Shown one piece after another: positions 7,500 to 62,573 of a stretch of 64,000 nucleotides of DNA (its first letter is position 1; the number at the start of each line of letters is the position of its first letter). Below the pieces are notes generated by a model, which ran no database searches, was not told the DNA's origin, and saw nothing but the letters and a program-made list of their open reading frames with translations. Made by a program: the position numbers and the translations under genes. The stretch covers positions 1 through 64,000 of the IMG/VR virus record IMGVR_UViG_3300025162_000016; one strand, written 5' to 3'.

Positions 7500-8709
7500 A
7501 AGAAATCCCTTTCCTTTAGGTGAGGGATGAATTTCGGAATATAATTAATAATTTTTTGATGTTTCGTATTTCTCAATCATATGTATAAGTAGAAAATGAA
7601 ATTTACTTATAAATATAGAATGTTTCCGACAAAAACCCAACAATCCATTCTAAATGGACAGTTGGAAACTTGTAGATTTCTTTATAATCATTTACTTGAA
7701 ATTAGGAAAAATGCATGGGAAAAAGAAAAAAAATCAATGTCCTGTTATGATACCCAAAATCTAATTCCTAAATTAAAAGAAGAATTTCCTCAACTCAAAT
7801 CTGTTTATTCACAAGTTCTCCAAAACGTAAATGTAAGAATTGATTTAGCATATCAAGGATTTTTTAGAAGATTGAAAAGTAATGAAAAATCTGGATATCC
7901 ACGCTTTAAAGGAAAAGGTAGATATAAATCCATTTGTTATTCACAATATGGAAATGGTTGTAAATTAGAAAAAAATAAATTATCTATTTCTAAAGTAGGA
8001 GATGTTTTCATTAAATTGCATAGACCAATTGAAGGTACACCGAAAACAGTTACTATAATAAAACAACCGACAGGTAAATGGTTCGTTTGTATTTCTTGTC
8101 AAGATGTTTCCAAAAAAATAAAGAATTTTCCCAAAACAAATAAAGAGTGTGGAATTGATGTTGGAATAACTTCGTTTGCTACTTTTGATAATGGTAATAA
8201 AATTGAAAATCCTCATTTTTTTGAAACCGAGGAAAAACAGTTATCAAAAGCACAAAATAAGGAAAAGTGGAAAGCGGTAAAAAGAATACATGAGAGGATT
8301 GGAAATAAGAGACATGAATTTCTTCATAAAATAACGAATGATATTCTTAAACAATATGATTTCATATCTATCGAAGATATTGATGTAAATTCTATTATAA
8401 GAAAAAGATGGAATAAGAAGCGGGTATATGATGTAGCGTGGAGTAATTTTGCAAACATACTTTCTCATAAAGCTGAAAATGCTGATAAGATTGTAGTAAA
8501 AATAAATCCGGCATATACTAGTCAGACATGTAGTGATTGCGGAACGAGAACAGTTATGGAAGAAAAGGATAGAATTTATAATTGTTCTTGTTGTGGGATG
8601 GTAAAAGATAGGGACGTGAATGCTGCAATAAACATTTTGAGATTGGGAACACAATCTCACGTTATTATATAACGAAGAAGCCCCTGCCTTTAGGCAGGGG
8701 AGTGTTCAC
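7500..8709 (+). mobile_element. IS200/IS605-family tnpB-only element
   Basis: Left-end hairpin ATCCCT..AGGGAT plus GAATT near 7505; right-end hairpin CCCCTGCCT/AGGCAGGGG (8681-8700) ending TTCAC at 8709. Confidence 0.8.
7596..8672 (+). CDS. tnpB: RNA-guided endonuclease TnpB (IS605 OrfB type)
   Basis: YKYRMFPT HTH; RuvC GIDVG, IEDI, DRDVNAA; CSDC/CSCC zinc finger. Confidence 0.92.
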   Translation: MKFTYKYRMFPTKTQQSILNGQLETCRFLYNHLLEIRKNAWEKEKKSMSCYDTQNLIPKLKEEFPQLKSVYSQVLQNVNVRIDLAYQGFFRRLKSNEKSGYPRFKGKGRYKSICYSQYGNGCKLEKNKLSISKVGDVFIKLHRPIEGTPKTVTIIKQPTGKWFVCISCQDVSKKIKNFPKTNKECGIDVGITSFATFDNGNKIENPHFFETEEKQLSKAQNKEKWKAVKRIHERIGNKRHEFLHKITNDILKQYDFISIEDIDVNSIIRKRWNKKRVYDVAWSNFANILSHKAENADKIVVKINPAYTSQTCSDCGTRTVMEEKDRIYNCSCCGMVKDRDVNAAINILRLGTQSHVII

Positions 8710-10435: not shown

Positions 10436-10981
10436 ATGATTAGATTAAAAAATATAGTAAATGGAATATTAGCCGAGGAGGAAAAAAGTTCGGAGGATAC
10501 GGTTGCGAATAATAAAGGATATAATATAAAAAATATTTATCATGGTACAACCGAGAAATTTAATGTATTCAAGTTTGATACATTAAAAAATGTAAAAGCA
10601 TCCGATACAGATAAGGTTATATATGCTACAGATTCCGAGGAAGAAGCTAAAATCGCCGGTAGTCCTGATAGCAGTCGATCTAAGGTGATGAAATTATATG
10701 GGAAATTAAAAAATCCTATGGTGGTTGATGCTAAAGGTACAGAAAAAAATAAAAGTTTTGGAACAATTGGTTATAAAAAATTAATACAAATGGCTAAAAG
10801 TAGGAATCATGACGGTGCCATTATAAAAAATGTTATCGATTTTGGTAATACTCCACAGACGACATACATATTTTTTGATACAAAGGCAGTTAAACTCGCC
10901 GGAGAAACTAAAGATAATAGCGGCAATTTAATTCCTTTATCACAGCGATTTAATTCAACCGTAGATGATTTGCGGTTTTGA
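10436..10981 (+). CDS. ADP-ribosyltransferase-like protein (ART of polyvalent-protein type)
   Basis: IYHGT..FNVF, Y.T, LKNP and HDGAII motifs; paralogue of 30841..31380. Confidence 0.55.
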   Translation: MIRLKNIVNGILAEEEKSSEDTVANNKGYNIKNIYHGTTEKFNVFKFDTLKNVKASDTDKVIYATDSEEEAKIAGSPDSSRSKVMKLYGKLKNPMVVDAKGTEKNKSFGTIGYKKLIQMAKSRNHDGAIIKNVIDFGNTPQTTYIFFDTKAVKLAGETKDNSGNLIPLSQRFNSTVDDLRF

Positions 10982-11079: not shown

Positions 11080-11649
11080 ATGAAACTATCGAAATGGGCA
11101 AAATTGCAAGGAATAAGTTACAGAACAGCATGGTCTTGGTTTAAGAATAACACATTGCCTATTAAATCTTATCAAACTCCAACTGGAACTATTATAGTAG
11201 ATGACTCGTTGGATGTCAAAGAAAATAATAATGAAGTTGATATTTACTGTAGAGTTAGTTCCTCTAATAAAAAATTGGACTTAGACAATCAACTTAAATT
11301 ATGTGAAGAATATTGTATTTCTAATGGATACAAAATTAGAAAATCACTAAAAGAAATTGCATCGGGAATGAATGATAATCGACCAAGATTGAATTTAATT
11401 TTGGACAATCCATCAAATAAATTAGTAGTCCTTTATAAAGACAGATTAACAAGATTTGGATTTAATTATATAGAAAAACTATTAAAATCAAAAAAGTGTG
11501 AGTTGATAGTAATAAATCAAAACAAAACTGAGGAAGAGGACTTATTAAAAGACTTCATTGCTATTATTACATCGTTCTGTTGTAGAATGTATGGTGCGAG
11601 AAGAGGACAATCAAAAGCATTACGTATGAAACAGGAATTGAAAACATGA
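11080..11649 (+). CDS. tnpA: IS607 transposase (MerR-like HTH plus serine recombinase)
   Basis: MKLSKWAK..GISYRTAW HTH; YCRVSS; KDRLTRFGF. Confidence 0.93.
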   Translation: MKLSKWAKLQGISYRTAWSWFKNNTLPIKSYQTPTGTIIVDDSLDVKENNNEVDIYCRVSSSNKKLDLDNQLKLCEEYCISNGYKIRKSLKEIASGMNDNRPRLNLILDNPSNKLVVLYKDRLTRFGFNYIEKLLKSKKCELIVINQNKTEEEDLLKDFIAIITSFCCRMYGARRGQSKALRMKQELKT

Positions 11650-12890
11650 TTAGGAGTTCCAAACATTCTACAAAATTTACAAATCTTCGGAAAATGAAGA
11701 CATTGGCGTTGTTTATCTCGGAATATAGAAAAATAGGACAAGAAATTGTTGACATAATATGGAATAATGGATATGAAGAATTTAATATTCAGGAGGATAA
11801 ACTAAATTGTCCGAAATATCTCGATTATAAAAAATTCAACATAAATACATCCTTATCGGCTCGGGCATTAAGTTCTTTGGTTACACAGATATGTTTTAGT
11901 TTATCATCGGCAACAAAAAAACGAAAACAAATATTATATGCAAAGAATAAATTAATATCTGAAGGAAAGCCGCTTGGTAGAATTGATAAGATTCTCGATA
12001 AATATAAATTAATTAAACCAAATTTTTCAAACATCAATCCAGAATTGAGTTCAAAATGTTGCGATATTAAGGATGGAAATTCTTTTAATTATTTTTTAAG
12101 AATAAAATCAATAGGAAAAATATACGGATGTATTAAAATACCTATAAAAAATACAAAAGTATCATTAAAATGGTTAAAAAATGGAAAATTATTAAATTCA
12201 TTTTCTATTGGTCAGCAATATATTTCCCTACGATTTAATATTACAAATAAAAATGTAAATGTTGGAACTAAAATAATTGGAATTGATCAAGGACTGAAAG
12301 ATGTCGCAACATTATCAGACCATCAAATAACACCAAAATATGATATTCACGGGCATTCACTTGAATCAATTATAAATACGATATCAAAGAAGAAACGAGG
12401 TTCAGATGCATTTATTAAATCGCAGGAACATAGAAAAAATTTTATTAATTGGGCAATTAACCAATTAAATTTTAATGACGCCAAAGAAATTCGATTGGAA
12501 AAAATATGGAATATAGGATATAAACGGCGTACATCAAGAAGACTTTCACACTGGACGAATACGTTGATACGAGATAAGATTAAACGGAAATGCGAAGAGC
12601 TGGAGGTTCCAGTTATCGAGCAAGATTCCTCTTATCGCTCTCAACGATGTTCTTGTTGCGGATTAGTACGAAAGGCCAATAGAAATGGTAAAATATATAA
12701 ATGTAAAACTTGTAAATTTGAATCAGATGCTGATTATAATGCAAGTTTAAATCATATTGTAGATTTACCCGAAATCAGTTGGCAGTTTCGCAATCAACGA
12801 AATAATCTAAAATGTGGTTTTTACTGGAAGCCAAGTGGATTATTTAGTATTGATGGAGTGGAGCTTAGAGTCCCACTTTCTACCGATTAA
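11646..12890 (+). CDS. tnpB: IS607-associated TnpB nuclease, RuvC triad intact
   Basis: IGIDQG, IRLEKI, DADYNAS; CSCC/CKTC zinc finger. Confidence 0.88.
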   Translation: MIRSSKHSTKFTNLRKMKTLALFISEYRKIGQEIVDIIWNNGYEEFNIQEDKLNCPKYLDYKKFNINTSLSARALSSLVTQICFSLSSATKKRKQILYAKNKLISEGKPLGRIDKILDKYKLIKPNFSNINPELSSKCCDIKDGNSFNYFLRIKSIGKIYGCIKIPIKNTKVSLKWLKNGKLLNSFSIGQQYISLRFNITNKNVNVGTKIIGIDQGLKDVATLSDHQITPKYDIHGHSLESIINTISKKKRGSDAFIKSQEHRKNFINWAINQLNFNDAKEIRLEKIWNIGYKRRTSRRLSHWTNTLIRDKIKRKCEELEVPVIEQDSSYRSQRCSCCGLVRKANRNGKIYKCKTCKFESDADYNASLNHIVDLPEISWQFRNQRNNLKCGFYWKPSGLFSIDGVELRVPLSTD

Positions 12891-12986
12891 GATAATTTTC
12901 TATATTTTATCTAACTCTATTAAACAATGAATAAACTAACAGAAAAATCATGATATTAACAATAGTTAGACACCAACTATACACAT

Positions 12987-13022
12987 GGTGAAGTGCTGGA
13001 ACAGACCAGTCACTATATCACC
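12987..13022 (+). CRISPR. Solitary CRISPR repeat, inverted relative to the array
   Basis: GGTGAAGTGCTGGAACAGACCAGTCACTATATCACC; 35/36 identical to the array repeat. Confidence 0.95.
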
Positions 13023-13092
13023 AACGCATCCAGATTGTAAAAAAATGAGAGAATCGTTAGTAAACAAATAAACAAATAAAAAAATATAAATT

Positions 13093-13251
13093 ATGGGAAA
13101 TTCAAGAACAATAAAAAGAAGTATCGCCCGAAACCCAGAACGAGTATGGGTGGCTAAACAAACAGCAGCTAAACAAGAAGAAGATCGTCTTAATTCATTG
13201 AAGTCGAAGAATAACGTGGAATCTAAAGAAATATCCAAAGATTCTCTTTGA
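13093..13251 (+). CDS. Small basic hypothetical protein (52 aa)
   Basis: Open frame MGNSRTIKR..KDSL with AT-rich upstream region. Confidence 0.45.
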   Translation: MGNSRTIKRSIARNPERVWVAKQTAAKQEEDRLNSLKSKNNVESKEISKDSL

Positions 13252-13291
13252 TTTTTCAGAAAAATCAATATAGTTATACATGGTTAAAAGT

Positions 13292-13370
13292 GCGAACGTG
13301 GTACAGTGGCCGACTACGCCTTCTCTACACGGAGGAATCATCGCAGGTTCGAATCCTGCCGTTCGCACCA
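13292..13370 (+). tRNA. tRNA-Val(UAC) with atypical C33 and 7-nt variable region
   Basis: Acceptor GCGAACG/CGTTCGC-A-CCA; anticodon stem CCTTC/GGAGG, loop TCTACAC; T arm GCAGG-TTCGAAT-CCTGC. Confidence 0.8.
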
Positions 13371-13380
13371 GCTTAGTTGT

Positions 13381-13454
13381 CGGTTATAGGTGTTGCGGAA
13401 GCATACAAGTTTTGGGAACTTGTGGGGAGCGTTCAACTCGCTCATAGCCGACCA
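13381..13454 (+). tRNA. tRNA-Pro(UGG)
   Basis: CGGTTAT/ATAGCCG-A-CCA; CAAGT-TTTGGGA-ACTTG; GAGCG-TTCAACT-CGCTC. Confidence 0.9.
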
Positions 13455-13464
13455 AATTTTTGAT

Positions 13465-13535
13465 ATAGTTATCTTATAACGGTAATACGCTAGTTTTGCA
13501 GACTAGAAATCGGGGTTCGGCTCCACGGAATTTAA
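13465..13535 (+). pseudogene. Degenerate tRNA (anticodon TGC, Ala-like)
   Basis: Intact anticodon arm CTAGT-TTTGCAG-ACTAG and GGTTCG T loop, but no acceptor stem or CCA. Confidence 0.5.
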
Positions 13536-13537
13536 AT

Positions 13538-13609
13538 TGCAGTAAGGTGTAAGAGTGCATGTGACTCTCATAAGGTCACGGGCCGGTGCGAATCCGGAAT
13601 CTGCATCCA
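13538..13609 (+). tRNA. tRNA with CAU anticodon (Met or Ile2), partly mismatched stems
   Basis: TGACT-CTCATAA-GGTCA arm; TGCAG/CTGCA acceptor with 2 inner mismatches; T loop TGCGAAT; CCA end. Confidence 0.6.
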
Positions 13610-13655
13610 ATTTTGCTAAACAGCAAATATAAATAAAAAAATAGAAGTTAAAAAT

Positions 13656-14198
13656 ATGAAAAAAATGTTAAATTTGGTAGCGGTTATTGGACTTATTACA
13701 ATGTTGGGCACGGGTTGTTCTACTATTAAAACGTTGACACCGGCACAAGTGTCAATTGGAATTCAACAGACGGCTCAAATTGGTGCAACATATGCTATTC
13801 GACAAAATACCAACAATGTTAAATATTTTGTTTTAGCAGACGCAGCATTGAGTACATTTGTTTTAGGAACGGATCTGTCTCCCGCCTCATTTCAATCGGC
13901 ATTGGCAAATGTCGGATTACAGGATCAGTGGGCACAACTTGCGGTTAGTGCAGTCATTATTGCATATACCGCAACTTATAATCAATATGTCATAAATCAG
14001 GTCAATTCTAATGCGATGGCTAAAGAGTTTTTATTGGCGGTTGATAATGGATTTAAAGTAGCATTGGGAAAACCAGTTGTTCCGATGGTTCCCATTGCGC
14101 TAAAAGGCGAAAGAACGGGAGCAGTTCCTTACTTCCTTAAAGATGGGAAGATAGATAAGAATGCGATTTACACAAAAGTTTTAGTTACTAAAAGATAA
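13656..14198 (+). CDS. Lipoprotein of unknown function
   Basis: Lipobox LGTGC. Confidence 0.7.
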   Translation: MKKMLNLVAVIGLITMLGTGCSTIKTLTPAQVSIGIQQTAQIGATYAIRQNTNNVKYFVLADAALSTFVLGTDLSPASFQSALANVGLQDQWAQLAVSAVIIAYTATYNQYVINQVNSNAMAKEFLLAVDNGFKVALGKPVVPMVPIALKGERTGAVPYFLKDGKIDKNAIYTKVLVTKR

Positions 14199-14215
14199 TC
14201 TTTTCTTAATCTCAG

Positions 14216-14250
14216 ACCCCCGATCCGTCAAAAAGATCGGGGAGTTTTCA
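14216..14250 (+). terminator. Terminator-like hairpin
   Basis: CCCCGATC/GATCGGGG stem followed by T-rich sequence; boundaries approximate. Confidence 0.55.
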
Positions 14251-14292
14251 CTTCTTCGTTCTATTTATAAAGGAATACGGCGGTTTCATTTT

Positions 14293-14430
14293 ATGAAAAA
14301 ATTATTGAATATATTCTTTTTATTTCTATTTATAATTTTATTTGTTGGGTGTTTATCGGCGGGAAAAGGATTATCAAACACGGAGGTTGAATTGATGCGA
14401 GTCAATCCACATATACCAATCAATAATTAA
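14293..14430 (+). CDS. Small lipoprotein (45 aa)
   Basis: MKKLLNIFFLFLFIILFVGC lipobox. Confidence 0.5.
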   Translation: MKKLLNIFFLFLFIILFVGCLSAGKGLSNTEVELMRVNPHIPINN

Positions 14431-14443
14431 AATATAATATCAT

Positions 14444-14731
14444 ATGAACGCCGATTCCGTAATTGTTTATGCGAAATTATTTTGTATATTTGGTGGTACA
14501 AGTTTGTTATGTCTTCAAACTGGGCTTTCGCAATGGTCAAACGAGGCGGCAACGCCGTCTAAGGTTCAGTGGATAATGATTTTAGGAGGAAGTTTAGGAG
14601 CTGGATTAATGGCAACTGGCGGATTTTTATCTAATGATTATGGGAACTATAGAAAATCGCAGAATGACATTAATAGCAATAGAAGAATGTCTTTAGTTAT
14701 TCGGAAAAAAAGAGATATGGAAAAATCATAA
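14444..14731 (+). CDS. Small membrane protein (holin-like, two hydrophobic segments)
   Basis: Two hydrophobic stretches and a basic C-terminus; the holin role is inference. Confidence 0.45.
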   Translation: MNADSVIVYAKLFCIFGGTSLLCLQTGLSQWSNEAATPSKVQWIMILGGSLGAGLMATGGFLSNDYGNYRKSQNDINSNRRMSLVIRKKRDMEKS

Positions 14732-14772
14732 TAAGTTCATTGACTTTTCATTGGACATATGATATATATGTT

Positions 14773-14932
14773 AGAGTTAAGTGCGGACAGGTGATCCCCG
14801 CAATGATACGGGGCAGTCATAGATAATAATGTAAGTTGTTAAGTTCAACCGAAGACTATGATAGGAGTCGTCACCGTAATAATAATGGCGGCTTTGATGA
14901 TGAGACAAGATTTTCATCTTACACTTAACTTT
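14773..14932 (+). ncRNA. Unclassified structured RNA of about 160 nt
   Basis: Closing stem AGTTAAGTG(14775)/CACTTAACT(14922); internal CCCCG/CGGGG, GTCATAG/CTATGAT, GTTG/CAAC and GATGA/TCATC stems; TTGACT promoter at 14740. Confidence 0.55.
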
Positions 14933-14936
14933 TTGT

Positions 14937-15022
14937 GGATAGTAAACTGTGACGGCTCACAGGATAGTCTTGAAAACTATAATGCCGAGAGGCATCTGGA
15001 TCGACACCAGTACTATCCTCCA
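14937..15022 (+). tRNA. tRNA-Ser(UGA) with non-canonical 8/4 acceptor/T-stem architecture
   Basis: 8-bp GGATAGTA/TACTATCC; 6-bp D stem CTGTGA/TCACAG; ATAGT-CTTGAAA-ACTAT; long V arm ATGCC-GAGA-GGCAT; 4-bp T stem CTGG/CCAG; T-CCA end. Confidence 0.85.
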
Positions 15023-15062
15023 ATTTCATTTCGGTGATAGTAAATTAAAAAAAAAACTATAA

Positions 15063-15182
15063 ATGAAATATAACCGCATTGTAATTTGGTGTGATGAATG
15101 TGATACACATCTCATCGAACCGGGTAAGAAATGTCCTAAATGTGGTCATAAGAAGGGTGATCCTAAGCGATTTAAAAAATGA
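15063..15182 (+). CDS. Small zinc-ribbon protein (39 aa)
   Basis: CDEC..CPKC. Confidence 0.55.
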   Translation: MKYNRIVIWCDECDTHLIEPGKKCPKCGHKKGDPKRFKK

Positions 15183-15856
15183 GTCATATTAAATTAAAAC
15201 ATCTTATTGAAGAGGGGTGGAGAAATAAACTCGGTGCATTGGGATTAGCGGGATCGCTATTAACTTCACCTGCATCTGCATCGCCGACCACAGGAGCACA
15301 GCATACCCATAATAAACCTGCAATAAAAAAACAAATTACAAAAGCAGTTCCTAATAAATCCGGTAAACCACCTATTGGAAAATCTAAACAGAACGTTGCT
15401 ACAAAAAAGGTTTCTAACAAAACGTCTGGTAATCCGCTTGCAGGTAAGCCGAAGCACGGTTTGGGTACAAAAGGTATCCGTAATAATAATCCCGGCAATA
15501 TTAAAAAGACAACCATTCCTTGGAAAGGAGTAGTAGGAACAGATGAAGAATTTCTTAAATTCGCAACACCGGAAGATGGTATTCGGGCAATTTCACGAAT
15601 TTTAAAAGTATATGTTACTAAATATAATTTAAATACTCCCTCACAAATTATGTCTCGCTGGGCTCCTCCAATTGAAAATCCTACTAAAAATTACATTGGG
15701 TTTGTTGCAGATAAGCTCGGAAAAAAACCAAATGATAAAATTGATATAACTAATGAAAATGAGTTTTCTAAATTAATTTCGGCTATTATTTCATTTGAAT
15801 GTGGTAGTATGCCATATGATAATGATACTATTAAACGAGGAATCAAAAAAGCATAA
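15179..15856 (+). CDS. Virion protein with lysozyme-like C-terminal domain (RNNNPGN family)
   Basis: GIRNNNPGNI, F.TPEDGIRA, RWAPP.EN motifs; N-terminal IKLKHLIEE tag. Confidence 0.55.
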   Translation: MSHIKLKHLIEEGWRNKLGALGLAGSLLTSPASASPTTGAQHTHNKPAIKKQITKAVPNKSGKPPIGKSKQNVATKKVSNKTSGNPLAGKPKHGLGTKGIRNNNPGNIKKTTIPWKGVVGTDEEFLKFATPEDGIRAISRILKVYVTKYNLNTPSQIMSRWAPPIENPTKNYIGFVADKLGKKPNDKIDITNENEFSKLISAIISFECGSMPYDNDTIKRGIKKA

Positions 15857-16552: not shown

Positions 16553-16933
16553 ATGCCACATATGAAAAATATCGACCAAGAAAATGAAAGTTATGTTCTT
16601 CCTTCAAATAATGAAGAGTTAAAATCTTTTATCTTCAAATATAAAGTAGACATGACAGAGCAGGTAATTTCCTCAATCGAATTTGCAATAAAACATAAAC
16701 TACCCATTGCGGAAATATTTCAATTTAAGGGGTCTAAATTTGTGGTTACGGTATCCCCGAAAGAATTCGATTGTAATTTAGAAAATATTTATAAATATTA
16801 TATTAAATCTGAGCAATATGAATTGTGCGAAAGAGTAATAAAATTGCGTGAAAAACTCCGTAAAAAACCAAATGAAAAAACGAAAAATTCTGCCACTGGA
16901 ACCCATTGTACAACCACAACTCCCAATTCTTGA
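16553..16933 (+). CDS. Hypothetical protein (UVR-like C-terminal helix)
   Basis: QYELCERVIKLRE motif. Confidence 0.5.
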   Translation: MPHMKNIDQENESYVLPSNNEELKSFIFKYKVDMTEQVISSIEFAIKHKLPIAEIFQFKGSKFVVTVSPKEFDCNLENIYKYYIKSEQYELCERVIKLREKLRKKPNEKTKNSATGTHCTTTTPNS

Positions 16934-17636
16934 TACCAGTCCAATCATTCCTCAAAGAAATAAAATAAAGAATCTTTTAAATATTTATCAACGCCCCGAC
17001 TTTACCGAAAAACAAAAAGAGTTTATAGAATTGGCACTTGATAAAAAAACAAAACTACTATTTGTTAGCGGACCTGCCGGAAGCACAAAAAGTTATTTAT
17101 CGGTTTATTGTGCGTTGAAATTACTTAATGATCGACGGGTTAGCGACTTAATATATGTTAGAAGTATTGTAGAATCTGCTGAATATAAGATTGGGTATCT
17201 CCCAGGGGAAATTGATTCGAAAGTTCTTCCATATATGGAGCCCTTGTATGACAAACTATCAGAGTTATTACCCAAAAATGAAGTGGATTATTTAAAAAAA
17301 GACCACCGAATAACTACTATTCCAGTTTCTTTTCTTAGGGGTCTCAATTTCAATGCGAAATGTGTTATAGCAGATGAGATCCAAAACATGACGATGAAAG
17401 AGTTAATAACTTTAACGACTCGTGTTGGGGAACATTCAAAAATAATACTTGCGGGAGATCCAGAACAATCCGATTTAAAAAATGGCAACAGGGGTGGATT
17501 TGAGAAAATAATGGGTATATTCGATGATGATGAATCCAGACAAAATGGAATTTTTACTTTTAGATTTACTGAAGAACATGTACTGCGAAGTAAATTAGTA
17601 AAATTTATTGTAAAAAAACTTAGAGGTCATAGTTAA
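16872..17636 (+). CDS. phoH: PhoH-family ATPase
   Basis: GPAGSTKS, GYLPG, FLRG, IADEIQN, GDPEQSD motifs. Confidence 0.93.
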   Translation: MKKRKILPLEPIVQPQLPILDTSPIIPQRNKIKNLLNIYQRPDFTEKQKEFIELALDKKTKLLFVSGPAGSTKSYLSVYCALKLLNDRRVSDLIYVRSIVESAEYKIGYLPGEIDSKVLPYMEPLYDKLSELLPKNEVDYLKKDHRITTIPVSFLRGLNFNAKCVIADEIQNMTMKELITLTTRVGEHSKIILAGDPEQSDLKNGNRGGFEKIMGIFDDDESRQNGIFTFRFTEEHVLRSKLVKFIVKKLRGHS

Positions 17637-20094: not shown

Positions 20095-21999
20095 ATGGCA
20101 AGCATACCCATTACTCAACTTAGCTTTATTCCGCTACCGGTAACAGGATCGGATTTATTGGCAATTGTACAAACCAGTTCGATGACAACTTATAAAGTCA
20201 ATGTGTTTGATGTCATAAGTTCTTATCCGTTTCCACAGCTTGTATCTGCTTCTTTATTTTCATCGAGGTCATTATTTGCATCGCAATCCATTTGGGCAGT
20301 ATCAGCTAGTTGGGCATCCCGCTCATTATTTTCTGAAATCTCTTCTCAATCATTATTTTCAGTATCCGCTAGTTGGGCATCTCGTTCTTTAGTTGCGAAT
20401 AGTGCCTTTTATTCTTCTGCTTCAAAAGAATCGATGTATTCAACGTATTCTTTATATGCGAATTTAACCGGCAGTGAAAATTATTTTCCATATTGGTATA
20501 CCGACAAAACATTGGATGGTGGAAATTTTCAAGTAAATGGAGGGTTACAGAAAAATTCTCTTTTATATAATTATCCTGCCGGTGCGGGTGCGGGGACCGT
20601 AATTTTTGCTCCAGATCCCACTCTTAATCCCGCATCCACGATACCGGGATTTCCCGGCTATTCACAAGCGGGATGGTGGAATCCTTCGGCGGTAGCATGG
20701 GATGGAGAAATTTGGTTTGGCGGAGCGGGGATTTTTACGGCCTTGCCAATCGTTAGTACAGTATTCAATGGGACAGATCAAAAAAAGTGGCCATTCGCCA
20801 CTGCAAGTAATGCAGTTTTCTCCAATCAATATTGGCAAGGGAATTATAATGGAGGGCCTCAAACTATAGGTAGTGCTAGCGATAGTATAGCAACTGCATT
20901 CAATGGCAAATGGGTGCGTATAGCTACTCTTGGGGTGAGAGAAGGTCCAGTAGTAGTAGCAAATGCTTCTAAAGGGGAAGTGAAGATGTTGGATACTGGA
21001 TTAAAAGGGAGAGTTCGGATTAAAATAGCAGATGGCGGGAATAAAAATTACGGAGTTGTTGGATTTTATCAAGATATTGATATGCATCTTGATGCGTCTG
21101 GAAATATTCCACTTGCAACTAATGCAACTATATTTGCGGTAGTTCAAGATGGATGGGATGTAATTCGAAAATTAAGAATATCGGTAGATGGATCTGGTAA
21201 TAATGATCCCATGTTCGCATTGGATATATTTATTAACGATATACCGGATGGAGTATATGGGTTTTATATTGAATGTCAATCATGGGGAGGAGTAAGGTTT
21301 TTGGAAACTCCAAATATTTCCCCGATTGCTTTAGTAGATGCAGATACCGACCCACTTTTTCCGAAATATTTAATTTTCCCACCGGCTCCTGGACATTATT
21401 CAAATAGACCTTTTGATACAGGACAGCCATATGTTATTGGGGGACAAAATGTCATTATTAACCCTAAAGTCAATGAAATTACTGAAAGTGCCGGTTATGG
21501 ACATACCAATTTAATAAATCCTTATTCATTAGATGTAAGTGGGTCAATCAATACTCAACAGTATTATGCCAAAGGGCAGGCAGGATTAAATGCAAATTAT
21601 GTAGCTTATCATCCTAGTGATTCGAAATGGTATAATTTAGAAATAACAGGCGGTATTCCTGTTAAAGCAACGGAGACTACTTCTCCGGTAGCTGGACCTA
21701 CAGGCCCTACTATTATTGCAGCCGGAAATGCGACCTGTCAAAGAGATATTGCTCCTACCGAAAATTATAAGTATGGGTGTAGCATAACAAGAATAGACAA
21801 TCAAAATATCGGGGTAACCGGGGGATTTCCTAGTTCATATGCGGTCACTGCTTTAGCTAGAAATTCCGCTGGAACGGCAGCTACAGGTTGTAGAATTAAT
21901 GATCAAGGGCCAACTGGGTTTACAATTAGTCTGGGAAATTCAATTGAAGACGGATTCAATCCAACGGTTATTCAATTTATTGCGGTGGGCGGCGGATAA
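20095..21999 (+). CDS. Tail fibre/receptor-binding-like protein
   Basis: SASWA repeats; Gly-rich beta-type C-terminal region. Confidence 0.5.
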   Translation: MASIPITQLSFIPLPVTGSDLLAIVQTSSMTTYKVNVFDVISSYPFPQLVSASLFSSRSLFASQSIWAVSASWASRSLFSEISSQSLFSVSASWASRSLVANSAFYSSASKESMYSTYSLYANLTGSENYFPYWYTDKTLDGGNFQVNGGLQKNSLLYNYPAGAGAGTVIFAPDPTLNPASTIPGFPGYSQAGWWNPSAVAWDGEIWFGGAGIFTALPIVSTVFNGTDQKKWPFATASNAVFSNQYWQGNYNGGPQTIGSASDSIATAFNGKWVRIATLGVREGPVVVANASKGEVKMLDTGLKGRVRIKIADGGNKNYGVVGFYQDIDMHLDASGNIPLATNATIFAVVQDGWDVIRKLRISVDGSGNNDPMFALDIFINDIPDGVYGFYIECQSWGGVRFLETPNISPIALVDADTDPLFPKYLIFPPAPGHYSNRPFDTGQPYVIGGQNVIINPKVNEITESAGYGHTNLINPYSLDVSGSINTQQYYAKGQAGLNANYVAYHPSDSKWYNLEITGGIPVKATETTSPVAGPTGPTIIAAGNATCQRDIAPTENYKYGCSITRIDNQNIGVTGGFPSSYAVTALARNSAGTAATGCRINDQGPTGFTISLGNSIEDGFNPTVIQFIAVGGG

Positions 22000-60569: not shown

Positions 60570-61159
60570 GCGATAATACAGTAAAAAGATCTCTTCAAGA
60601 GATCATTAAAGAAGAATATAAAAAATGCTTAATAGATCCGGTATATTTCATGCGGAAATATGTCAAAATTCAGCATCCTATTCGTGGAACTATAGCGTTC
60701 GATCTTTATCCGTTTCAAGCATCTACGCTGAAAGATTTTGCCGATAATGATTTCAGCATCGTATTGAAATCTCGCCAAATGGGAATATCCACACTAGTAG
60801 CGGCATATTCTCTGTGGCTTATGATTTTTCATAAAGATAAAAATGTACTTATCATTTCTATTAAACAAGACGTATCTAAAGAAATTGTATCAAAAATTCG
60901 ATTTGCAAATGATAATCTTCCGTCTTGGATGAGGGTAGAATGCAAAGAAGATAATCGACTATCACTTAAATTAGCCAATGGATCACAAGTATCAGCGGTC
61001 TCATCTGCTACAACCGCAGGGAGATCCGCAGCACTTAGTCTTTTAGTTTTAGATGAATGTTGCGAAAAATCTACAGTGGTGTATATTCGAAACAAGAAAA
61101 CCGGCGAAACAAAACCGGTAAAAATTGGTGAATTATATGAATCAAATATATACGTGTAA
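60566..61159 (+). CDS. terL: Terminase large subunit N-fragment plus split-intein IntN (33 aa, 61058-61156)
   Basis: LYPFQ, KSRQMGIST, GRS, Walker B LLVLDE then CCEKSTVV..IGELY. Confidence 0.9.
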   Translation: MSDNTVKRSLQEIIKEEYKKCLIDPVYFMRKYVKIQHPIRGTIAFDLYPFQASTLKDFADNDFSIVLKSRQMGISTLVAAYSLWLMIFHKDKNVLIISIKQDVSKEIVSKIRFANDNLPSWMRVECKEDNRLSLKLANGSQVSAVSSATTAGRSAALSLLVLDECCEKSTVVYIRNKKTGETKPVKIGELYESNIYV

Positions 61160-62573
61160 ACTGGATAATAAAGAATGCAAATCGCAGTCAGAATTTGTGG
61201 TTCATTTGAAAAAATGTCATGGATTTAATACGAAAAGTTATTATGATTCGGTGATTAAACCCGGATTAAATGGGAAATGTTTAAATTGTACAAAAGATAC
61301 GATTTTTTTAGGATTGCGGGAGGGATATCAAAAATTTTGTTCTAATAAATGCCGCAGTGAATATTTTAAAAATCACAAGGAGTTGCAAGAGTTACGAACA
61401 CAAAAAATAAAAAAAACTAAGTTAGAAAAATATGGAGACGAAAATTATAATAATGTAGATAAAATGCAGAAAACATGTTTGAAAAAATATGGGAAAATAA
61501 CAGCTACTGGCACCGAAGAATATAATAAAAAACATCGTGAAACTTGTTTAAAGAGATATGGAGTGGAACATCATGCTCAATCCGACGAAGTAAAAAATAA
61601 GTCTAAACAGACATGTTTAAATCATTATGGAGTGGAATATACGTTACAATCAAAGGAAATAAGAGATAGGATAGATAATACTGTTAATGAAAAATATGGC
61701 GGATATACATTGGCATCGAAGACATTATCGGAGAAAATGAAAAATACAATGATAGAGAAGTATGGCGTGGAAAATGCGCTACAAAGTGATGTCATAAAAG
61801 AAAAGCAACGGGCAACCAATCGGGAGAGATATGGAGCATCTGTGCCAACTCAAAATAAAGATGTTATTTTAAAAATGAAGAAAAGTAACATAAAAAAATA
61901 TGGAATTGAGAATACTTTTAATCTTATACAGACAAAAAACACTTTTCTGGAAAAATATAACGTTATAAACCCATCTCAAATACCGGCAGTTCAAGAAAAA
62001 ATTAAGGAAACGTGTCTGGAGAAATATGGTAGTAATACTTTTTTTGCCTCGGATTATGCAAAGGAAAAAATTAAAAATACATGCATGGAACGATATGGAG
62101 TGTCCTGTGTTTTATTGCTCCCCGAAATAAAAGAAAAATCGAAGCAAACCAACATTTTAAAGTATGGAGTTGCACACCCAATGCAAAATTCAATAATTAG
62201 AAACAAAGTAATGTCGGCTATAAATAGAAAGTCGTATAAATTACAACAATATATGACCATTTTTAACGATAATATTGTATATCAATCTCTTCCGGAACTT
62301 GCATTTATTAAGCTGTGCGAATCGAGGGGACTTCGAATTTTAAATGGACCGGTTTTACCGTATATTTTAGATGAAAAAAACAGAATGTATTATTCAGACT
62401 TTTTAATTTCCGACACGAAAAGTCAGCGAATAGTAGAAATTAAAAGAAAGCATGAATGGTGGTTTTCCGGATTAAAATCGGGAGAAATTAAAGCAAAAAC
62501 GAAATGCGCAATAAAATTCAGTAAAGAAAATGGATATTTGCCGTATAAAATCATTTTCGAAAATAAGATATGA
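61137..62573 (+). CDS. Free-standing endonuclease (KTCLEKYG repeats plus PD-(D/E)XK domain) between the intein halves
   Basis: Many xTCLxKYG repeats; YQS..E, Y.SDF, IVEIK. Confidence 0.75.
   Translation: MNQIYTCKLDNKECKSQSEFVVHLKKCHGFNTKSYYDSVIKPGLNGKCLNCTKDTIFLGLREGYQKFCSNKCRSEYFKNHKELQELRTQKIKKTKLEKYGDENYNNVDKMQKTCLKKYGKITATGTEEYNKKHRETCLKRYGVEHHAQSDEVKNKSKQTCLNHYGVEYTLQSKEIRDRIDNTVNEKYGGYTLASKTLSEKMKNTMIEKYGVENALQSDVIKEKQRATNRERYGASVPTQNKDVILKMKKSNIKKYGIENTFNLIQTKNTFLEKYNVINPSQIPAVQEKIKETCLEKYGSNTFFASDYAKEKIKNTCMERYGVSCVLLLPEIKEKSKQTNILKYGVAHPMQNSIIRNKVMSAINRKSYKLQQYMTIFNDNIVYQSLPELAFIKLCESRGLRILNGPVLPYILDEKNRMYYSDFLISDTKSQRIVEIKRKHEWWFSGLKSGEIKAKTKCAIKFSKENGYLPYKIIFENKI

What the first reader, a model, noticed from the sequence alone, without database searches (positions are those of the whole stretch)
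14937..15022. tRNA-Ser(UGA) with 8/4 acceptor branch and Sec-like D arm
Seen: a perfect 8-bp acceptor stem, 4-bp T stem, 6-bp D stem with 4-nt loop, long variable arm, A54-type T loop (ATCGACA), U discriminator and encoded CCA. Established: rare 8/4 serine tRNAs have been described in some bacteria and their phages, and standard tRNA finders tend to miss them. It can hint at the host lineage and at specialised translation during infection.
Basis: partly seen in the sequence, partly recalled or inferred. Interest (0 to 1): 0.65.

Follow-up and report, generated by a model that had tools for sequence, protein, structure and literature searches.

The report
Phage 8/4-type serine tRNA gene
A 369-kb freshwater phage carries a serine tRNA gene whose cloverleaf has an 8-bp acceptor stem and a 4-bp T stem instead of the usual 7 and 5; this rare shape has been described before, is widespread in phage tRNA clusters, and is missed by standard tRNA finders.

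Summary
Window 14937-15022 (+) folds as its minimum-free-energy structure into the cloverleaf described: 8-bp acceptor stem, AA linker, 6-bp D stem with CGGC loop, 5-bp anticodon stem with anticodon UGA, 5-bp variable arm, 4-bp T stem with AUCGACA loop, U73 and an encoded CCA.

Default ARAGORN and the Rfam tRNA and tRNA-Sec models miss it. A pattern built from its loops retrieved 80 other distinct sequences with the same geometry, from phage tRNA clusters and bacterial genomes. Across them 97% of cells pair, and 25 of 28 pairs show changes on both sides. The eighth acceptor pair always forms, with four Watson-Crick types; the pair that a 7/5 fold would need fails in 35% of sequences. A covariance model built without the window scores it 75 bits (E 2.5e-18). 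Two 80%-identical relatives differ from it by six double compensatory changes and break no pair.

This is the (8/4) tRNA-Ser class of Mukai et al. 2017, so it is a new member of a known kind. It most likely supplies serine at UCN codons alongside the phage's seven other tRNAs. Expression and serylation could not be tested. The family occurs in at least five bacterial phyla, so it gives no host hint.

The parts
14937..15022 (+). Complete (8/4) tRNA-Ser(UGA) gene, 86 nt including the encoded CCA
   Evidence: The MFE fold equals the cloverleaf. ARAGORN -ps80 calls it tRNA-Ser(tga). Family model R2, built without it, scores it 75.3 bits, E 2.5e-18. It is the only copy in the 369-kb phage.
14937..14944 (+). 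Acceptor stem, 5' strand (GGATAGTA), 8 nt; pairs with 15011-15018
   Evidence: Sequence. Across the family all 8 pairs are 98.6% paired and 7 of 8 show changes on both sides. The 8th pair is UA 43, GC 19, AU 9, CG 9, UG 1, and is never unpaired.
14945..14946 (+). Two-nucleotide linker AA between the acceptor and D stems
   Evidence: Sequence. The linker is AA in 57 of 81 family members, and its first base is A in 79 of 81.
14947..14962 (+). D arm: 6-bp stem CTGTGA/TCACAG with 4-nt loop CGGC (14953-14956)
   Evidence: The CGGC loop is present in 81 of 81 members, although the viral search pattern did not require it. All 6 stem pairs show changes on both sides and are 99.4% paired.
14964..14980 (+). 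Anticodon arm: 5-bp stem ATAGT/ACTAT, loop CTTGAAA, anticodon TGA at 14971-14973 (reads UCA and probably other UCN codons)
   Evidence: The stem pairs covary in the family.
14981..14995 (+). Long variable arm: A, then 5-bp stem ATGCC/GGCAT with loop GAGA
   Evidence: The family variable-arm stem is 97.3% paired, with 4 of 5 pairs changed on both sides. The two nearest relatives have unrelated variable-arm sequences that still fold into a stem-loop.
14996..15010 (+). T arm: 4-bp stem CTGG/CCAG with 7-nt loop ATCGACA (A at the first loop position, where canonical tRNAs have T54)
   Evidence: The family T stem is 100% paired. The fifth pair that a 7/5 fold would need is U-U here and is unpaired in 28 of 81 members.
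15011..15018 (+). Acceptor stem, 3' strand (TACTATCC)
15019..15022 (+). Discriminator U73 and genome-encoded CCA end
   Evidence: The family discriminator is G in 66, U in 14 and A in 1. All seven other tRNAs of this phage are also drawn with an encoded CCA.

Best explanation
Window 14937-15022 is a functional phage gene for a serine tRNA with anticodon UGA. Its acceptor/T-arm helix is split 8 + 4 base pairs instead of 7 + 5.

Proposed mechanism (inferred, not shown here):
- It is transcribed on the + strand with its neighbours. The 12-bp coaxial acceptor/T helix has the canonical total length, so RNase P should cut at G1. The 3' end is trimmed back to the encoded CCA.
- The host seryl-tRNA synthetase should charge it, recognising the long variable arm and the G1-C72/G2-C71/A3-U70 acceptor end with U73. 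It does not read the anticodon. The phage has no class-II synthetase core of its own.
- Because the helix is 12 bp and not the 13 bp of selenocysteine tRNA, EF-Tu rather than SelB should deliver it.
- It then reads UCA, and probably other UCN codons, as serine.

It completes a set of eight phage tRNAs. Seven read A-ending codons (GUA, CCA, AAA, UUA, AGA, AUA, UCA) and the eighth reads AUG. The A-ending codons are common in this 34%-GC genome. The likely role is therefore to keep serine decoding going late in infection.
For: Shown:
- The exact cloverleaf is the MFE fold, z = -3.84. Relaxed ARAGORN calls it tRNA-Ser(tga) 8/4.
- 80 other distinct sequences share the geometry: 97.3% of cells paired, 25 of 28 pairs changed on both sides, covariation score 0.848 against 0.21 for shuffles and 0.07-0.15 for slid controls.
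- The 8th acceptor pair always forms, with four Watson-Crick types. The alternative 7/5 pair fails in 28 of 81 members and never covaries.
- The leave-one-out model scores the window 75.3 bits, E 2.5e-18.
- Two 80%-identical relatives on otherwise unrelated contigs show 6 double compensatory changes and 100% pairing.
- Family members lie in phage tRNA clusters, with a median of 8.5 ARAGORN tRNAs per locus.
- In all 16 clusters with 14 or more tRNAs, no other Ser(UGA) tRNA is called, so the 8/4 gene fills that slot.
- 8/4 genes with the anticodons CGA, GGA and GCU sit beside them.
- The phage uses the standard code. TCA is 21% of its serine codons and TCN 70%. The phage tRNA set has anticodons UAC, UGG, CAU, UUU, UAA, UCU, UAU and UGA.
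- No PF00587 synthetase core and no CCA-adding enzyme were found in the phage.

From the literature: 8/4 and 9/3 allo-tRNAs are folded, processed, serylated and delivered by EF-Tu in E. coli, and (8/4) tRNA-Ser occurs in phages (PMC5389517).
Against: - There is no expression, processing or aminoacylation evidence for this gene. All five runs that hold the DNA are DNA runs.
- The discriminator is U73, whereas 66 of 81 family members and both nearest relatives have G73. G73 is the usual bacterial serine determinant, so charging could be weaker.
- The gene stands 1.3 kb away from the phage's nearest tRNA cluster, not inside it.
- That cluster contains at least one degenerate tRNA-like sequence, so tRNA decay does occur in this genome.
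- The family was retrieved with this tRNA's own loop motifs and filtered for pairing. Percent-paired values are therefore inflated by selection. The covariation and the slid controls are not affected.
- The host is unknown, so no codon-usage mismatch between phage and host can be shown.
Confidence: 0.85

Rival explanations
1. It is a serine tRNA whose odd shape is the point. On this reading it is a structurally divergent replacement that escapes host defences or toxins that disable canonical tRNA-Ser (for example AbiEii/MenT-type nucleotidyltransferases, or tRNA nucleases), so phage translation survives the attack. This adds a selective reason to the best explanation rather than contradicting it.
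For: - The 8/4 Ser type is recurrent in phage tRNA clusters and in many unrelated phages.
- The ~80%-identical copies sit on contigs with no detectable protein similarity to this phage, which suggests the gene itself is exchanged or selected.
- The toxin MenT3, an AbiEii relative, shows a tRNA preference in vitro that its paralogues lack. Its authors propose that MenT toxins could target phage-encoded tRNAs (PMC10435456).
- This reading is inference only.
Against: - No defence or counter-defence gene was linked to the tRNA here.
- The acceptor end and CCA, where MenT enzymes act, are ordinary.
- The same 8/4 type also occurs in bacterial genomes inside tRNA arrays.
- No experiment bears on it.
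Confidence: 0.1
2. It is an inactive relic or a tRNA-like RNA that no longer works in translation, such as a pseudogene, a regulatory or processing signal, or a remnant of an integration site.
For: - It has the less common U73.
- It is isolated from the tRNA clusters.
- A degenerate tRNA-like Met(CAU) sequence and a weak tRNA remnant lie 1.4 kb upstream.
- Mukai et al. describe inactive allo-tRNA-like sequences associated with mobile elements.
- Two TnpB-like genes lie within 8 kb.
Against: - All 28 pairs are intact, and the CM alignment shows no non-standard pair.
- All loop positions conserved in the family are kept.
- The nearest relatives differ only by compensatory changes.
- The phage has no tyrosine integrase.
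- The record has direct terminal repeats and is rated complete.
Confidence: 0.04
3. It is a selenocysteine, cysteine or other non-serine tRNA, or a chance set of hairpins.
For: - The D arm (6 bp plus tetraloop) and the 8-bp acceptor stem resemble bacterial tRNA-Sec.
- U73 is also the cysteine discriminator.
Against: - The anticodon is UGA (serine), not UCA or GCA.
- The acceptor/T helix is 12 bp, not the 13 bp that SelB requires.
- No Rfam tRNA-Sec hit appears at E <= 10.
- Chance is excluded by z = -3.84 and E 2.5e-18.
Confidence: 0.01

Closest known systems
(8/4) tRNA-Ser of bacteriophages, proteobacteria and rumen Clostridia (Mukai et al. 2017, NAR 45:2776, PMC5389517); those with Y20 are counted there as (8/4) allo-tRNA
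   Same: 8-bp acceptor stem plus 4-bp T stem; long D stem with a tetraloop; long variable arm; G73 or U73; a serine anticodon; location in phages and phage tRNA clusters. The bacterial hits found here include rumen Clostridia and a Rhodobacteraceae genome, matching the sources named in the paper.
   Different: This copy is an outlying member. Its mean identity to the other 80 is 52%, against 62% among them. Its T stem is CUGG/CCAG instead of the near-universal GGGG/CCUC, it is AU-rich (46% GC), it has U73, and it comes from a 369-kb freshwater phage.
Recoding allo-tRNAs (8/4 and 9/3) of Acidobacteria, Clostridia and Proteobacteria
   Same: The same cloverleaf class and the same presumed SerRS recognition. 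These were shown to be processed, charged and used by EF-Tu and the ribosome in E. coli.
   Different: Those carry non-serine or stop anticodons and act, or may act, as missense or nonsense suppressors, or are inactive. This one has a cognate serine anticodon, and the phage uses the standard code with all three stop codons.
Bacterial selenocysteine tRNA (selC; 8/5, 13 bp)
   Same: 8-bp acceptor stem, 6-bp D stem with a 4-nt loop, long variable arm, and charging by SerRS.
   Different: The T stem is 4 bp rather than 5 (12-bp rather than 13-bp helix). The anticodon is UGA rather than UCA, the anticodon stem is 5 bp, and the discriminator is U73 rather than G73. The Rfam tRNA-Sec model does not match.
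Canonical bacterial type-II tRNA-Ser (7/5)
   Same: Anticodon loop CUUGAAA, long variable arm, GGA... acceptor start, and the presumed decoding role.
   Different: The canonical form has a 7/5 helix, a short D stem (3-4 bp) with a large loop, and a UUCGAAU-type T loop. The Rfam tRNA model (RF00005) gives no hit on the window's gene. Lower-scoring R1 matches (29-41 bits) were also found in the five bacterial genomes searched, but were not inspected.

Membership tests
(8/4) tRNA-Ser / (8/4) allo-tRNA group (Mukai et al. 2017) | 12-bp acceptor branch split into an 8-bp acceptor stem and a 4-bp T stem | tested here: met
   The MFE fold and relaxed ARAGORN both give 8/4. The 8th pair covaries and always forms in the family, while the pair needed for 7/5 fails in 35% of members and is U-U in the window.
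(8/4) tRNA-Ser / (8/4) allo-tRNA group (Mukai et al. 2017) | tRNA-Sec-like D arm: long stem with a tetraloop | tested here: met
   6-bp stem and CGGC loop. All six pairs covary, and the loop is invariant in 81 of 81 members.
(8/4) tRNA-Ser / (8/4) allo-tRNA group (Mukai et al. 2017) | Long variable arm | tested here: met
   15 nt with a 5-bp stem and a 4-nt loop. The family variable-arm stem is 97% paired.
(8/4) tRNA-Ser / (8/4) allo-tRNA group (Mukai et al. 2017) | Discriminator G73 or U73 | tested here: met
   U at 15019. Family: G 66, U 14, A 1.
(8/4) tRNA-Ser / (8/4) allo-tRNA group (Mukai et al. 2017) | Pyrimidine at position 20 (Y20), used by the paper to count an (8/4) tRNA-Ser as allo-tRNA | tested here: inconclusive
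   The last base of the CGGC D loop is C. Equating it with position 20 is my own numbering; the paper's figure was not available.
(8/4) tRNA-Ser / (8/4) allo-tRNA group (Mukai et al. 2017) | Serine anticodon (separates tRNA-Ser from recoding allo-tRNAs) | tested here: met
   UGA lies in a 7-nt loop CUUGAAA, flanked by U33 and A37.
(8/4) tRNA-Ser / (8/4) allo-tRNA group (Mukai et al. 2017) | Fits a sequence-plus-structure profile of the other members | tested here: met
   The leave-one-out covariance model R2 gives 75.3 bits, E 2.5e-18, full length, with no non-standard pair. Caveat: the members were collected with this tRNA's own loop motifs.
(8/4) tRNA-Ser / (8/4) allo-tRNA group (Mukai et al. 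2017) | Serylation by SerRS and use in translation | not testable with these tools
   No RNA runs hold the sequence. Biochemistry is needed.
Bacterial tRNA-Sec (selC) | 13-bp acceptor branch (8/5), anticodon UCA, match to Rfam tRNA-Sec | tested here: not met
   The T stem is 4 bp and the anticodon is UGA. No clan CL00001 hit over 14937-15022 at E <= 10.
Canonical tRNA (Rfam RF00005, 7/5 cloverleaf) | 7-bp acceptor stem plus 5-bp T stem, and a score above the Rfam gathering threshold | tested here: not met
   No RF00005 hit even at E <= 10. A 7/5 fold would need a U-U pair. Default ARAGORN is silent.
Recoding allo-tRNA (missense or nonsense suppressor) | Anticodon that does not match the serine (or alanine) identity of the tRNA body | tested here: not met
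   The anticodon UGA is cognate for serine. The phage ORFs are open under the standard code, with TAA, TGA and TAG all used as stops.

The most novel reading that the evidence does not exclude
The 8/4 shape is not a neutral quirk. It would be a phage device that keeps a serine tRNA out of reach of host tRNA-directed defences (AbiEii/MenT-type nucleotidyltransferases or tRNA nucleases). That would explain why near-identical copies of this tRNA sit in otherwise unrelated phages. In this phage it may also be made as one transcript with the unique ~160-nt structured RNA that abuts its 5' end (14773-14934), much as stable small RNAs are co-transcribed with tRNAs in the phage T4 tRNA cluster (from my own knowledge; not checked here).
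Probability: 0.1. Interest if true: 0.65.

Novelty: new member of a known kind. Interest (0 to 1): 0.35.

Why it matters
- Annotation. Default ARAGORN and Rfam leave this gene out, and ARAGORN misses 76 of the 81 family members. Phage tRNA inventories, codon-supply analyses and tRNA-based host predictions therefore undercount serine tRNAs in a systematic way. In every large cluster examined, the 8/4 gene was the only Ser(UGA) tRNA.
- Biology. The result extends the (8/4) tRNA-Ser class to a 369-kb freshwater phage. It also shows with covariation statistics that the 8/4 fold, not 7/5, is the conserved form.
- A tool. The covariance model built here could be used to find more members.
- Limits. 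It does not change what is known about the genetic code or about this phage's host.

Tried and rejected
- GenBank phages. blastn (distant mode) of window 12900-15400 found no match.
- Relatives through neighbouring proteins. The downstream transglycosylase-like gene gave 80 loci that share only the domain. The 634-aa protein at 20095-21999 gave only the same phage. A second contig, IMGVR_UViG_3300009502_000024, carries an identical copy of the tRNA locus.
- Supplementary sequences of Mukai et al. are not held, so no direct alignment to the published (8/4) tRNA-Ser was possible.
- Expression. The five runs that hold the DNA are freshwater or lake DNA runs. Read laying was not used, because contigs of DNA runs cannot show RNA ends.
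- Phage-encoded partners. No class-II synthetase core (PF00587), no CCA-adding enzyme (PF01743) and no tyrosine integrase (PF00589) were found in the 369-kb genome.
- Second copy or other 8/4 tRNA in this phage: none.
- Exact T-arm pattern in viral contigs: only the same phage.
- Upstream 160-nt structure. There is no Rfam hit and no similar sequence in the genome or in about 300 fetched loci. It is not conserved next to the two nearest relatives.
- Promoter and terminator scan. It was uninformative; its hits inside the tRNA are the tRNA's own hairpins.
- Host inference from the tRNA. Rejected, because the family spans at least five phyla.
- Protein structure prediction, complex prediction and the large protein searches were not used, because the finding is an RNA gene.

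Full report
**Setting.** The window is the first 64 kb of a 368,758-bp viral record with direct terminal repeats, rated complete. The same contig turned up in the metagenome collection. The DNA is held by five freshwater or lake DNA runs from two studies, and by no RNA run. The genome is about 34% GC. Most genes lie on the + strand, and the genome uses the standard code: ORFs of at least 120 aa cover 78% of it, with stops TAA 149, TGA 82 and TAG 34. Genes near the finding include two TnpB-like ORFs, an ADP-ribosyltransferase-domain ORF, a transglycosylase-like ORF and PhoH.

**The observation.** Window 14937-15022 (+) reads as follows:
- GGAUAGUA, the 5' strand of the acceptor stem
- AA, the linker
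- CUGUGA-CGGC-UCACAG, the D arm
- G
- AUAGU-CUUGAAA-ACUAU, the anticodon arm
- A, then AUGCC-GAGA-GGCAU, the variable arm
- CUGG-AUCGACA-CCAG, the T arm
- UACUAUCC, the 3' strand of the acceptor stem
- U, then CCA

The unconstrained MFE fold is exactly this 8/4 cloverleaf: -29.1 kcal/mol, z = -3.84, with none of 200 shuffles folding as well. A 7/5 reading would need a U-U pair.

**Standard tools.** Default ARAGORN reports three tRNAs in the window and seven in the genome, but not this one. With the threshold lowered to 80% it calls tRNA-Ser(tga), 86 nt, and draws it 8/4. Rfam gives no tRNA or tRNA-Sec hit here, either at gathering score or at E <= 10 on a 2.6-kb slice.

**Relatives.** GenBank phages hold nothing similar. 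Neighbouring proteins led only to a second contig with an identical tRNA locus. I then searched IMG/VR for the tRNA's loops only: CTTGAAA, a gap, ATCGACA, 12 free bases, then K-CCA. About 80 of them have an 8-nt 5' strand complementary to the 8 nt before the discriminator, at exactly the same distance. They also have the 6-bp D stem and, although it was not required, the CGGC D loop.

A related pattern over one genome per prokaryotic species gave 89 stretches. About 30 have the full architecture. Their records are labelled Nocardia (seven species), Clostridia and rumen MAGs, Erysipelotrichaceae, Bacilli, Prevotella/Bacteroidales, Elusimicrobiales and Rhodobacteraceae. After filtering and removing duplicates there are 81 distinct sequences including the window's.

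**Covariation (alignment A1).**
- 97.3% of 2267 cells form standard pairs.
- 25 of 28 pairs show changes on both sides.
- The covariation score is 0.848, against 0.21 for shuffles and 0.07-0.15 when the partners are slid by one to three columns.
- The eighth acceptor pair is UA 43, GC 19, AU 9, CG 9 and UG 1, and is never unpaired.
- The alternative fifth T-stem pair that a 7/5 fold would need is UA 43, UG 10 and unpaired 28, with no double change. The conserved form is therefore 8/4.
- The filter required most pairs to form, so the paired percentage is inflated. The double changes and the slid controls are not affected by that.

**Membership.** A covariance model built from the 80 other sequences scores the window's gene 75.3 bits, E 2.5e-18, over its full length with no non-standard pair, and finds nothing else in the window. 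The model that includes it finds one copy in the whole phage. The gene is an outlier: mean identity to the others is 52%, against 62% among them, and its T stem is CUGG/CCAG rather than GGGG/CCUC.

**Nearest relatives.** A metagenome scan that demanded its T arm found two closer relatives, about 80% identical, on 7-kb contigs. These contigs show no tblastx similarity to the phage. Against them the window's gene shows six pairs changed on both sides, four in the acceptor stem and two in the D stem. There is one G-U change, 100% pairing, and an unrelated but still hairpin-forming variable arm.

**Context of the family.**
- Members lie in phage tRNA clusters. The median is 8.5 ARAGORN tRNAs per fetched locus, and 40 of 58 loci have five or more.
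- In the 16 clusters with 14 or more tRNAs, no other Ser(UGA) tRNA is called.
- Some clusters hold further 8/4 genes with the anticodons CGA, GGA and GCU. Some variants lack the two-base linker.
- In bacterial genomes the gene also lies in tRNA arrays. One Rhodobacteraceae genome has four tandem copies.
- Default ARAGORN detects 5 of the 81.

**What it is.** These features are the ones Mukai et al. (2017) give for (8/4) tRNA-Ser: an 8/4 branch, a tRNA-Sec-like D arm, a long variable arm, and G73 or U73. [quoted passage not shown] They also showed that 8/4 and 9/3 allo-tRNAs are folded, processed, serylated and delivered by EF-Tu in E. coli. The window's gene is not tRNA-Sec: its helix is 12 bp rather than 13, its anticodon is UGA rather than UCA, and Rfam gives no hit. 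It is not a recoding allo-tRNA either, because its anticodon is cognate for serine and the phage uses the standard code.

**How it most likely works.** These steps are inferred.
- The 12-bp acceptor/T helix keeps the canonical length, so RNase P and EF-Tu should treat it as an ordinary elongator tRNA.
- Host SerRS should charge it through the long variable arm and the acceptor end. The phage has no class-II synthetase core and no CCA-adding enzyme, and the CCA is encoded.
- It would read UCA and probably other UCN codons. TCA is 21% and TCN 70% of the phage's serine codons.
- The phage's other tRNAs have the anticodons UAC, UGG, CAU, UUU, UAA, UCU and UAU. The set thus serves A-ending codons that are frequent in this AT-rich genome: TTA 41%, AGA 36%, CCA 34%, GTA 33%, ATA 31% and AAA 81% of their families.

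**What is not shown.**
- There is no evidence of expression, processing or charging.
- U73 is the minority discriminator (14 of 81), and both nearest relatives have G73.
- The host is unknown. Because the family spans at least five phyla, the tRNA gives no usable host hint.
- A speculative extra reading is that the odd shape protects a serine tRNA from host tRNA-directed toxins. Its support is indirect: the gene's wide spread among unrelated phages, and literature on MenT/AbiEii toxins.

**Verdict.** The gene is a new and somewhat divergent member of a known, rarely annotated tRNA class.

Noticed in passing
window 14773-14934 (+), with a promoter-like TTGACT-17 nt-TATATA (TG just upstream) at 14740-14768: The ~160 nt that abut the 5' end of the tRNA fold into a multi-branched structure closed by a 10-bp stem (-44.4 kcal/mol, z = -3.0). 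There is no Rfam match and no similar sequence elsewhere in the genome or in about 300 fetched loci. It is not conserved beside the two nearest tRNA relatives. It could be a co-transcribed leader or small RNA, or simply AT-rich spacer. A 59-aa ORF (14858-15037) with a hydrophobic start overlaps it and the tRNA, and is probably spurious.
   Followed up: partly
window 13531-13609 (+): The 'tRNA-Met(CAT)' called by default ARAGORN is irregular. Only 5 acceptor pairs form (UGCAG/CUGCA), with three mismatched positions below them. It has a 6-bp anticodon stem and a 4-bp T stem with loop UGCGAAU. There is no Rfam hit, and the fold is no better than shuffles (z = -0.3). It may be a decaying tRNA or another non-canonical one laid out 8/4.
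   Followed up: partly
window 13464-13535 (+): A weak tRNA-like remnant lies between tRNA-Pro and the irregular Met: Rfam tRNA 17 bits, E = 5, and ARAGORN -ps80 'tRNA-Ala(tgc)' with acceptor mismatches. It is probably a tRNA pseudogene.
   Followed up: no
window 13292-13454 (+); genome 286137-288184 (outside the window): The phage's other tRNAs are Val(UAC) and Pro(UGG) in the window, and Lys(UUU), Leu(UAA), Arg(UCU) and Ile(UAU) at 286-288 kb. All read A-ending codons and all are drawn with an encoded CCA. The Ile(UAU) anticodon is itself unusual for bacteria.
   Followed up: partly
window 7596-8672 (+) and 11646-12890 (+): Two TnpB-like ORFs (IS605 OrfB / Cas12f-like TNB domain; phrog_506 transposase, E 7e-94 for the first). 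The second ends 400 nt before the tRNA cluster. Their guide (omega) RNAs were not looked for.
   Followed up: no
window 10436-10981 (+): A 181-aa ORF with an ART-PolyVal ADP-ribosyltransferase domain (Pfam PF18760, E 8e-10).
   Followed up: no
window 15063-15182 (+), 15179-15856 (+), 16848-17636 (+), 61125-62573 (+): Just downstream of the tRNA lie a 39-aa zinc-ribbon ORF, a transglycosylase/endolysin-like ORF (phrog_873, E 7e-44) and PhoH. Further on is a homing-endonuclease-like ORF (61125-62573).
   Followed up: no
L098:60-145, 1742-1826, 1832-1916; L175:581-757; L107:3881-4059; L125:4178-4265; L163:4365-4545: Other phage tRNA clusters carry whole sets of 8/4 serine isoacceptors (CGA, GGA, GCU beside UGA). 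They also carry a variant in which the 8-bp acceptor stem runs straight into the D stem with no linker nucleotides.
   Followed up: partly
L304:5663-5750 and L305:3715-3803 (metagenome contigs Ga0315274_10033793, Ga0315284_10028281): The two nearest relatives of the window's tRNA (about 80% identity, same anticodon and T arms) sit on contigs with no detectable protein similarity to this phage. One of them lacks an encoded CCA. This suggests the tRNA gene moves, or is conserved, independently of the phage backbone.
   Followed up: partly
L291 (Prevotella MAG, G003:C19:14264-17349) and L306:10024-10433: One bacterial contig with the 8/4 Ser gene holds 12 tRNAs in 3 kb, including an ARAGORN 'tRNA-SeC(tca)' call. 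A viral or metagenome contig with an 8/4 Ser gene also encodes a tmRNA.
   Followed up: no
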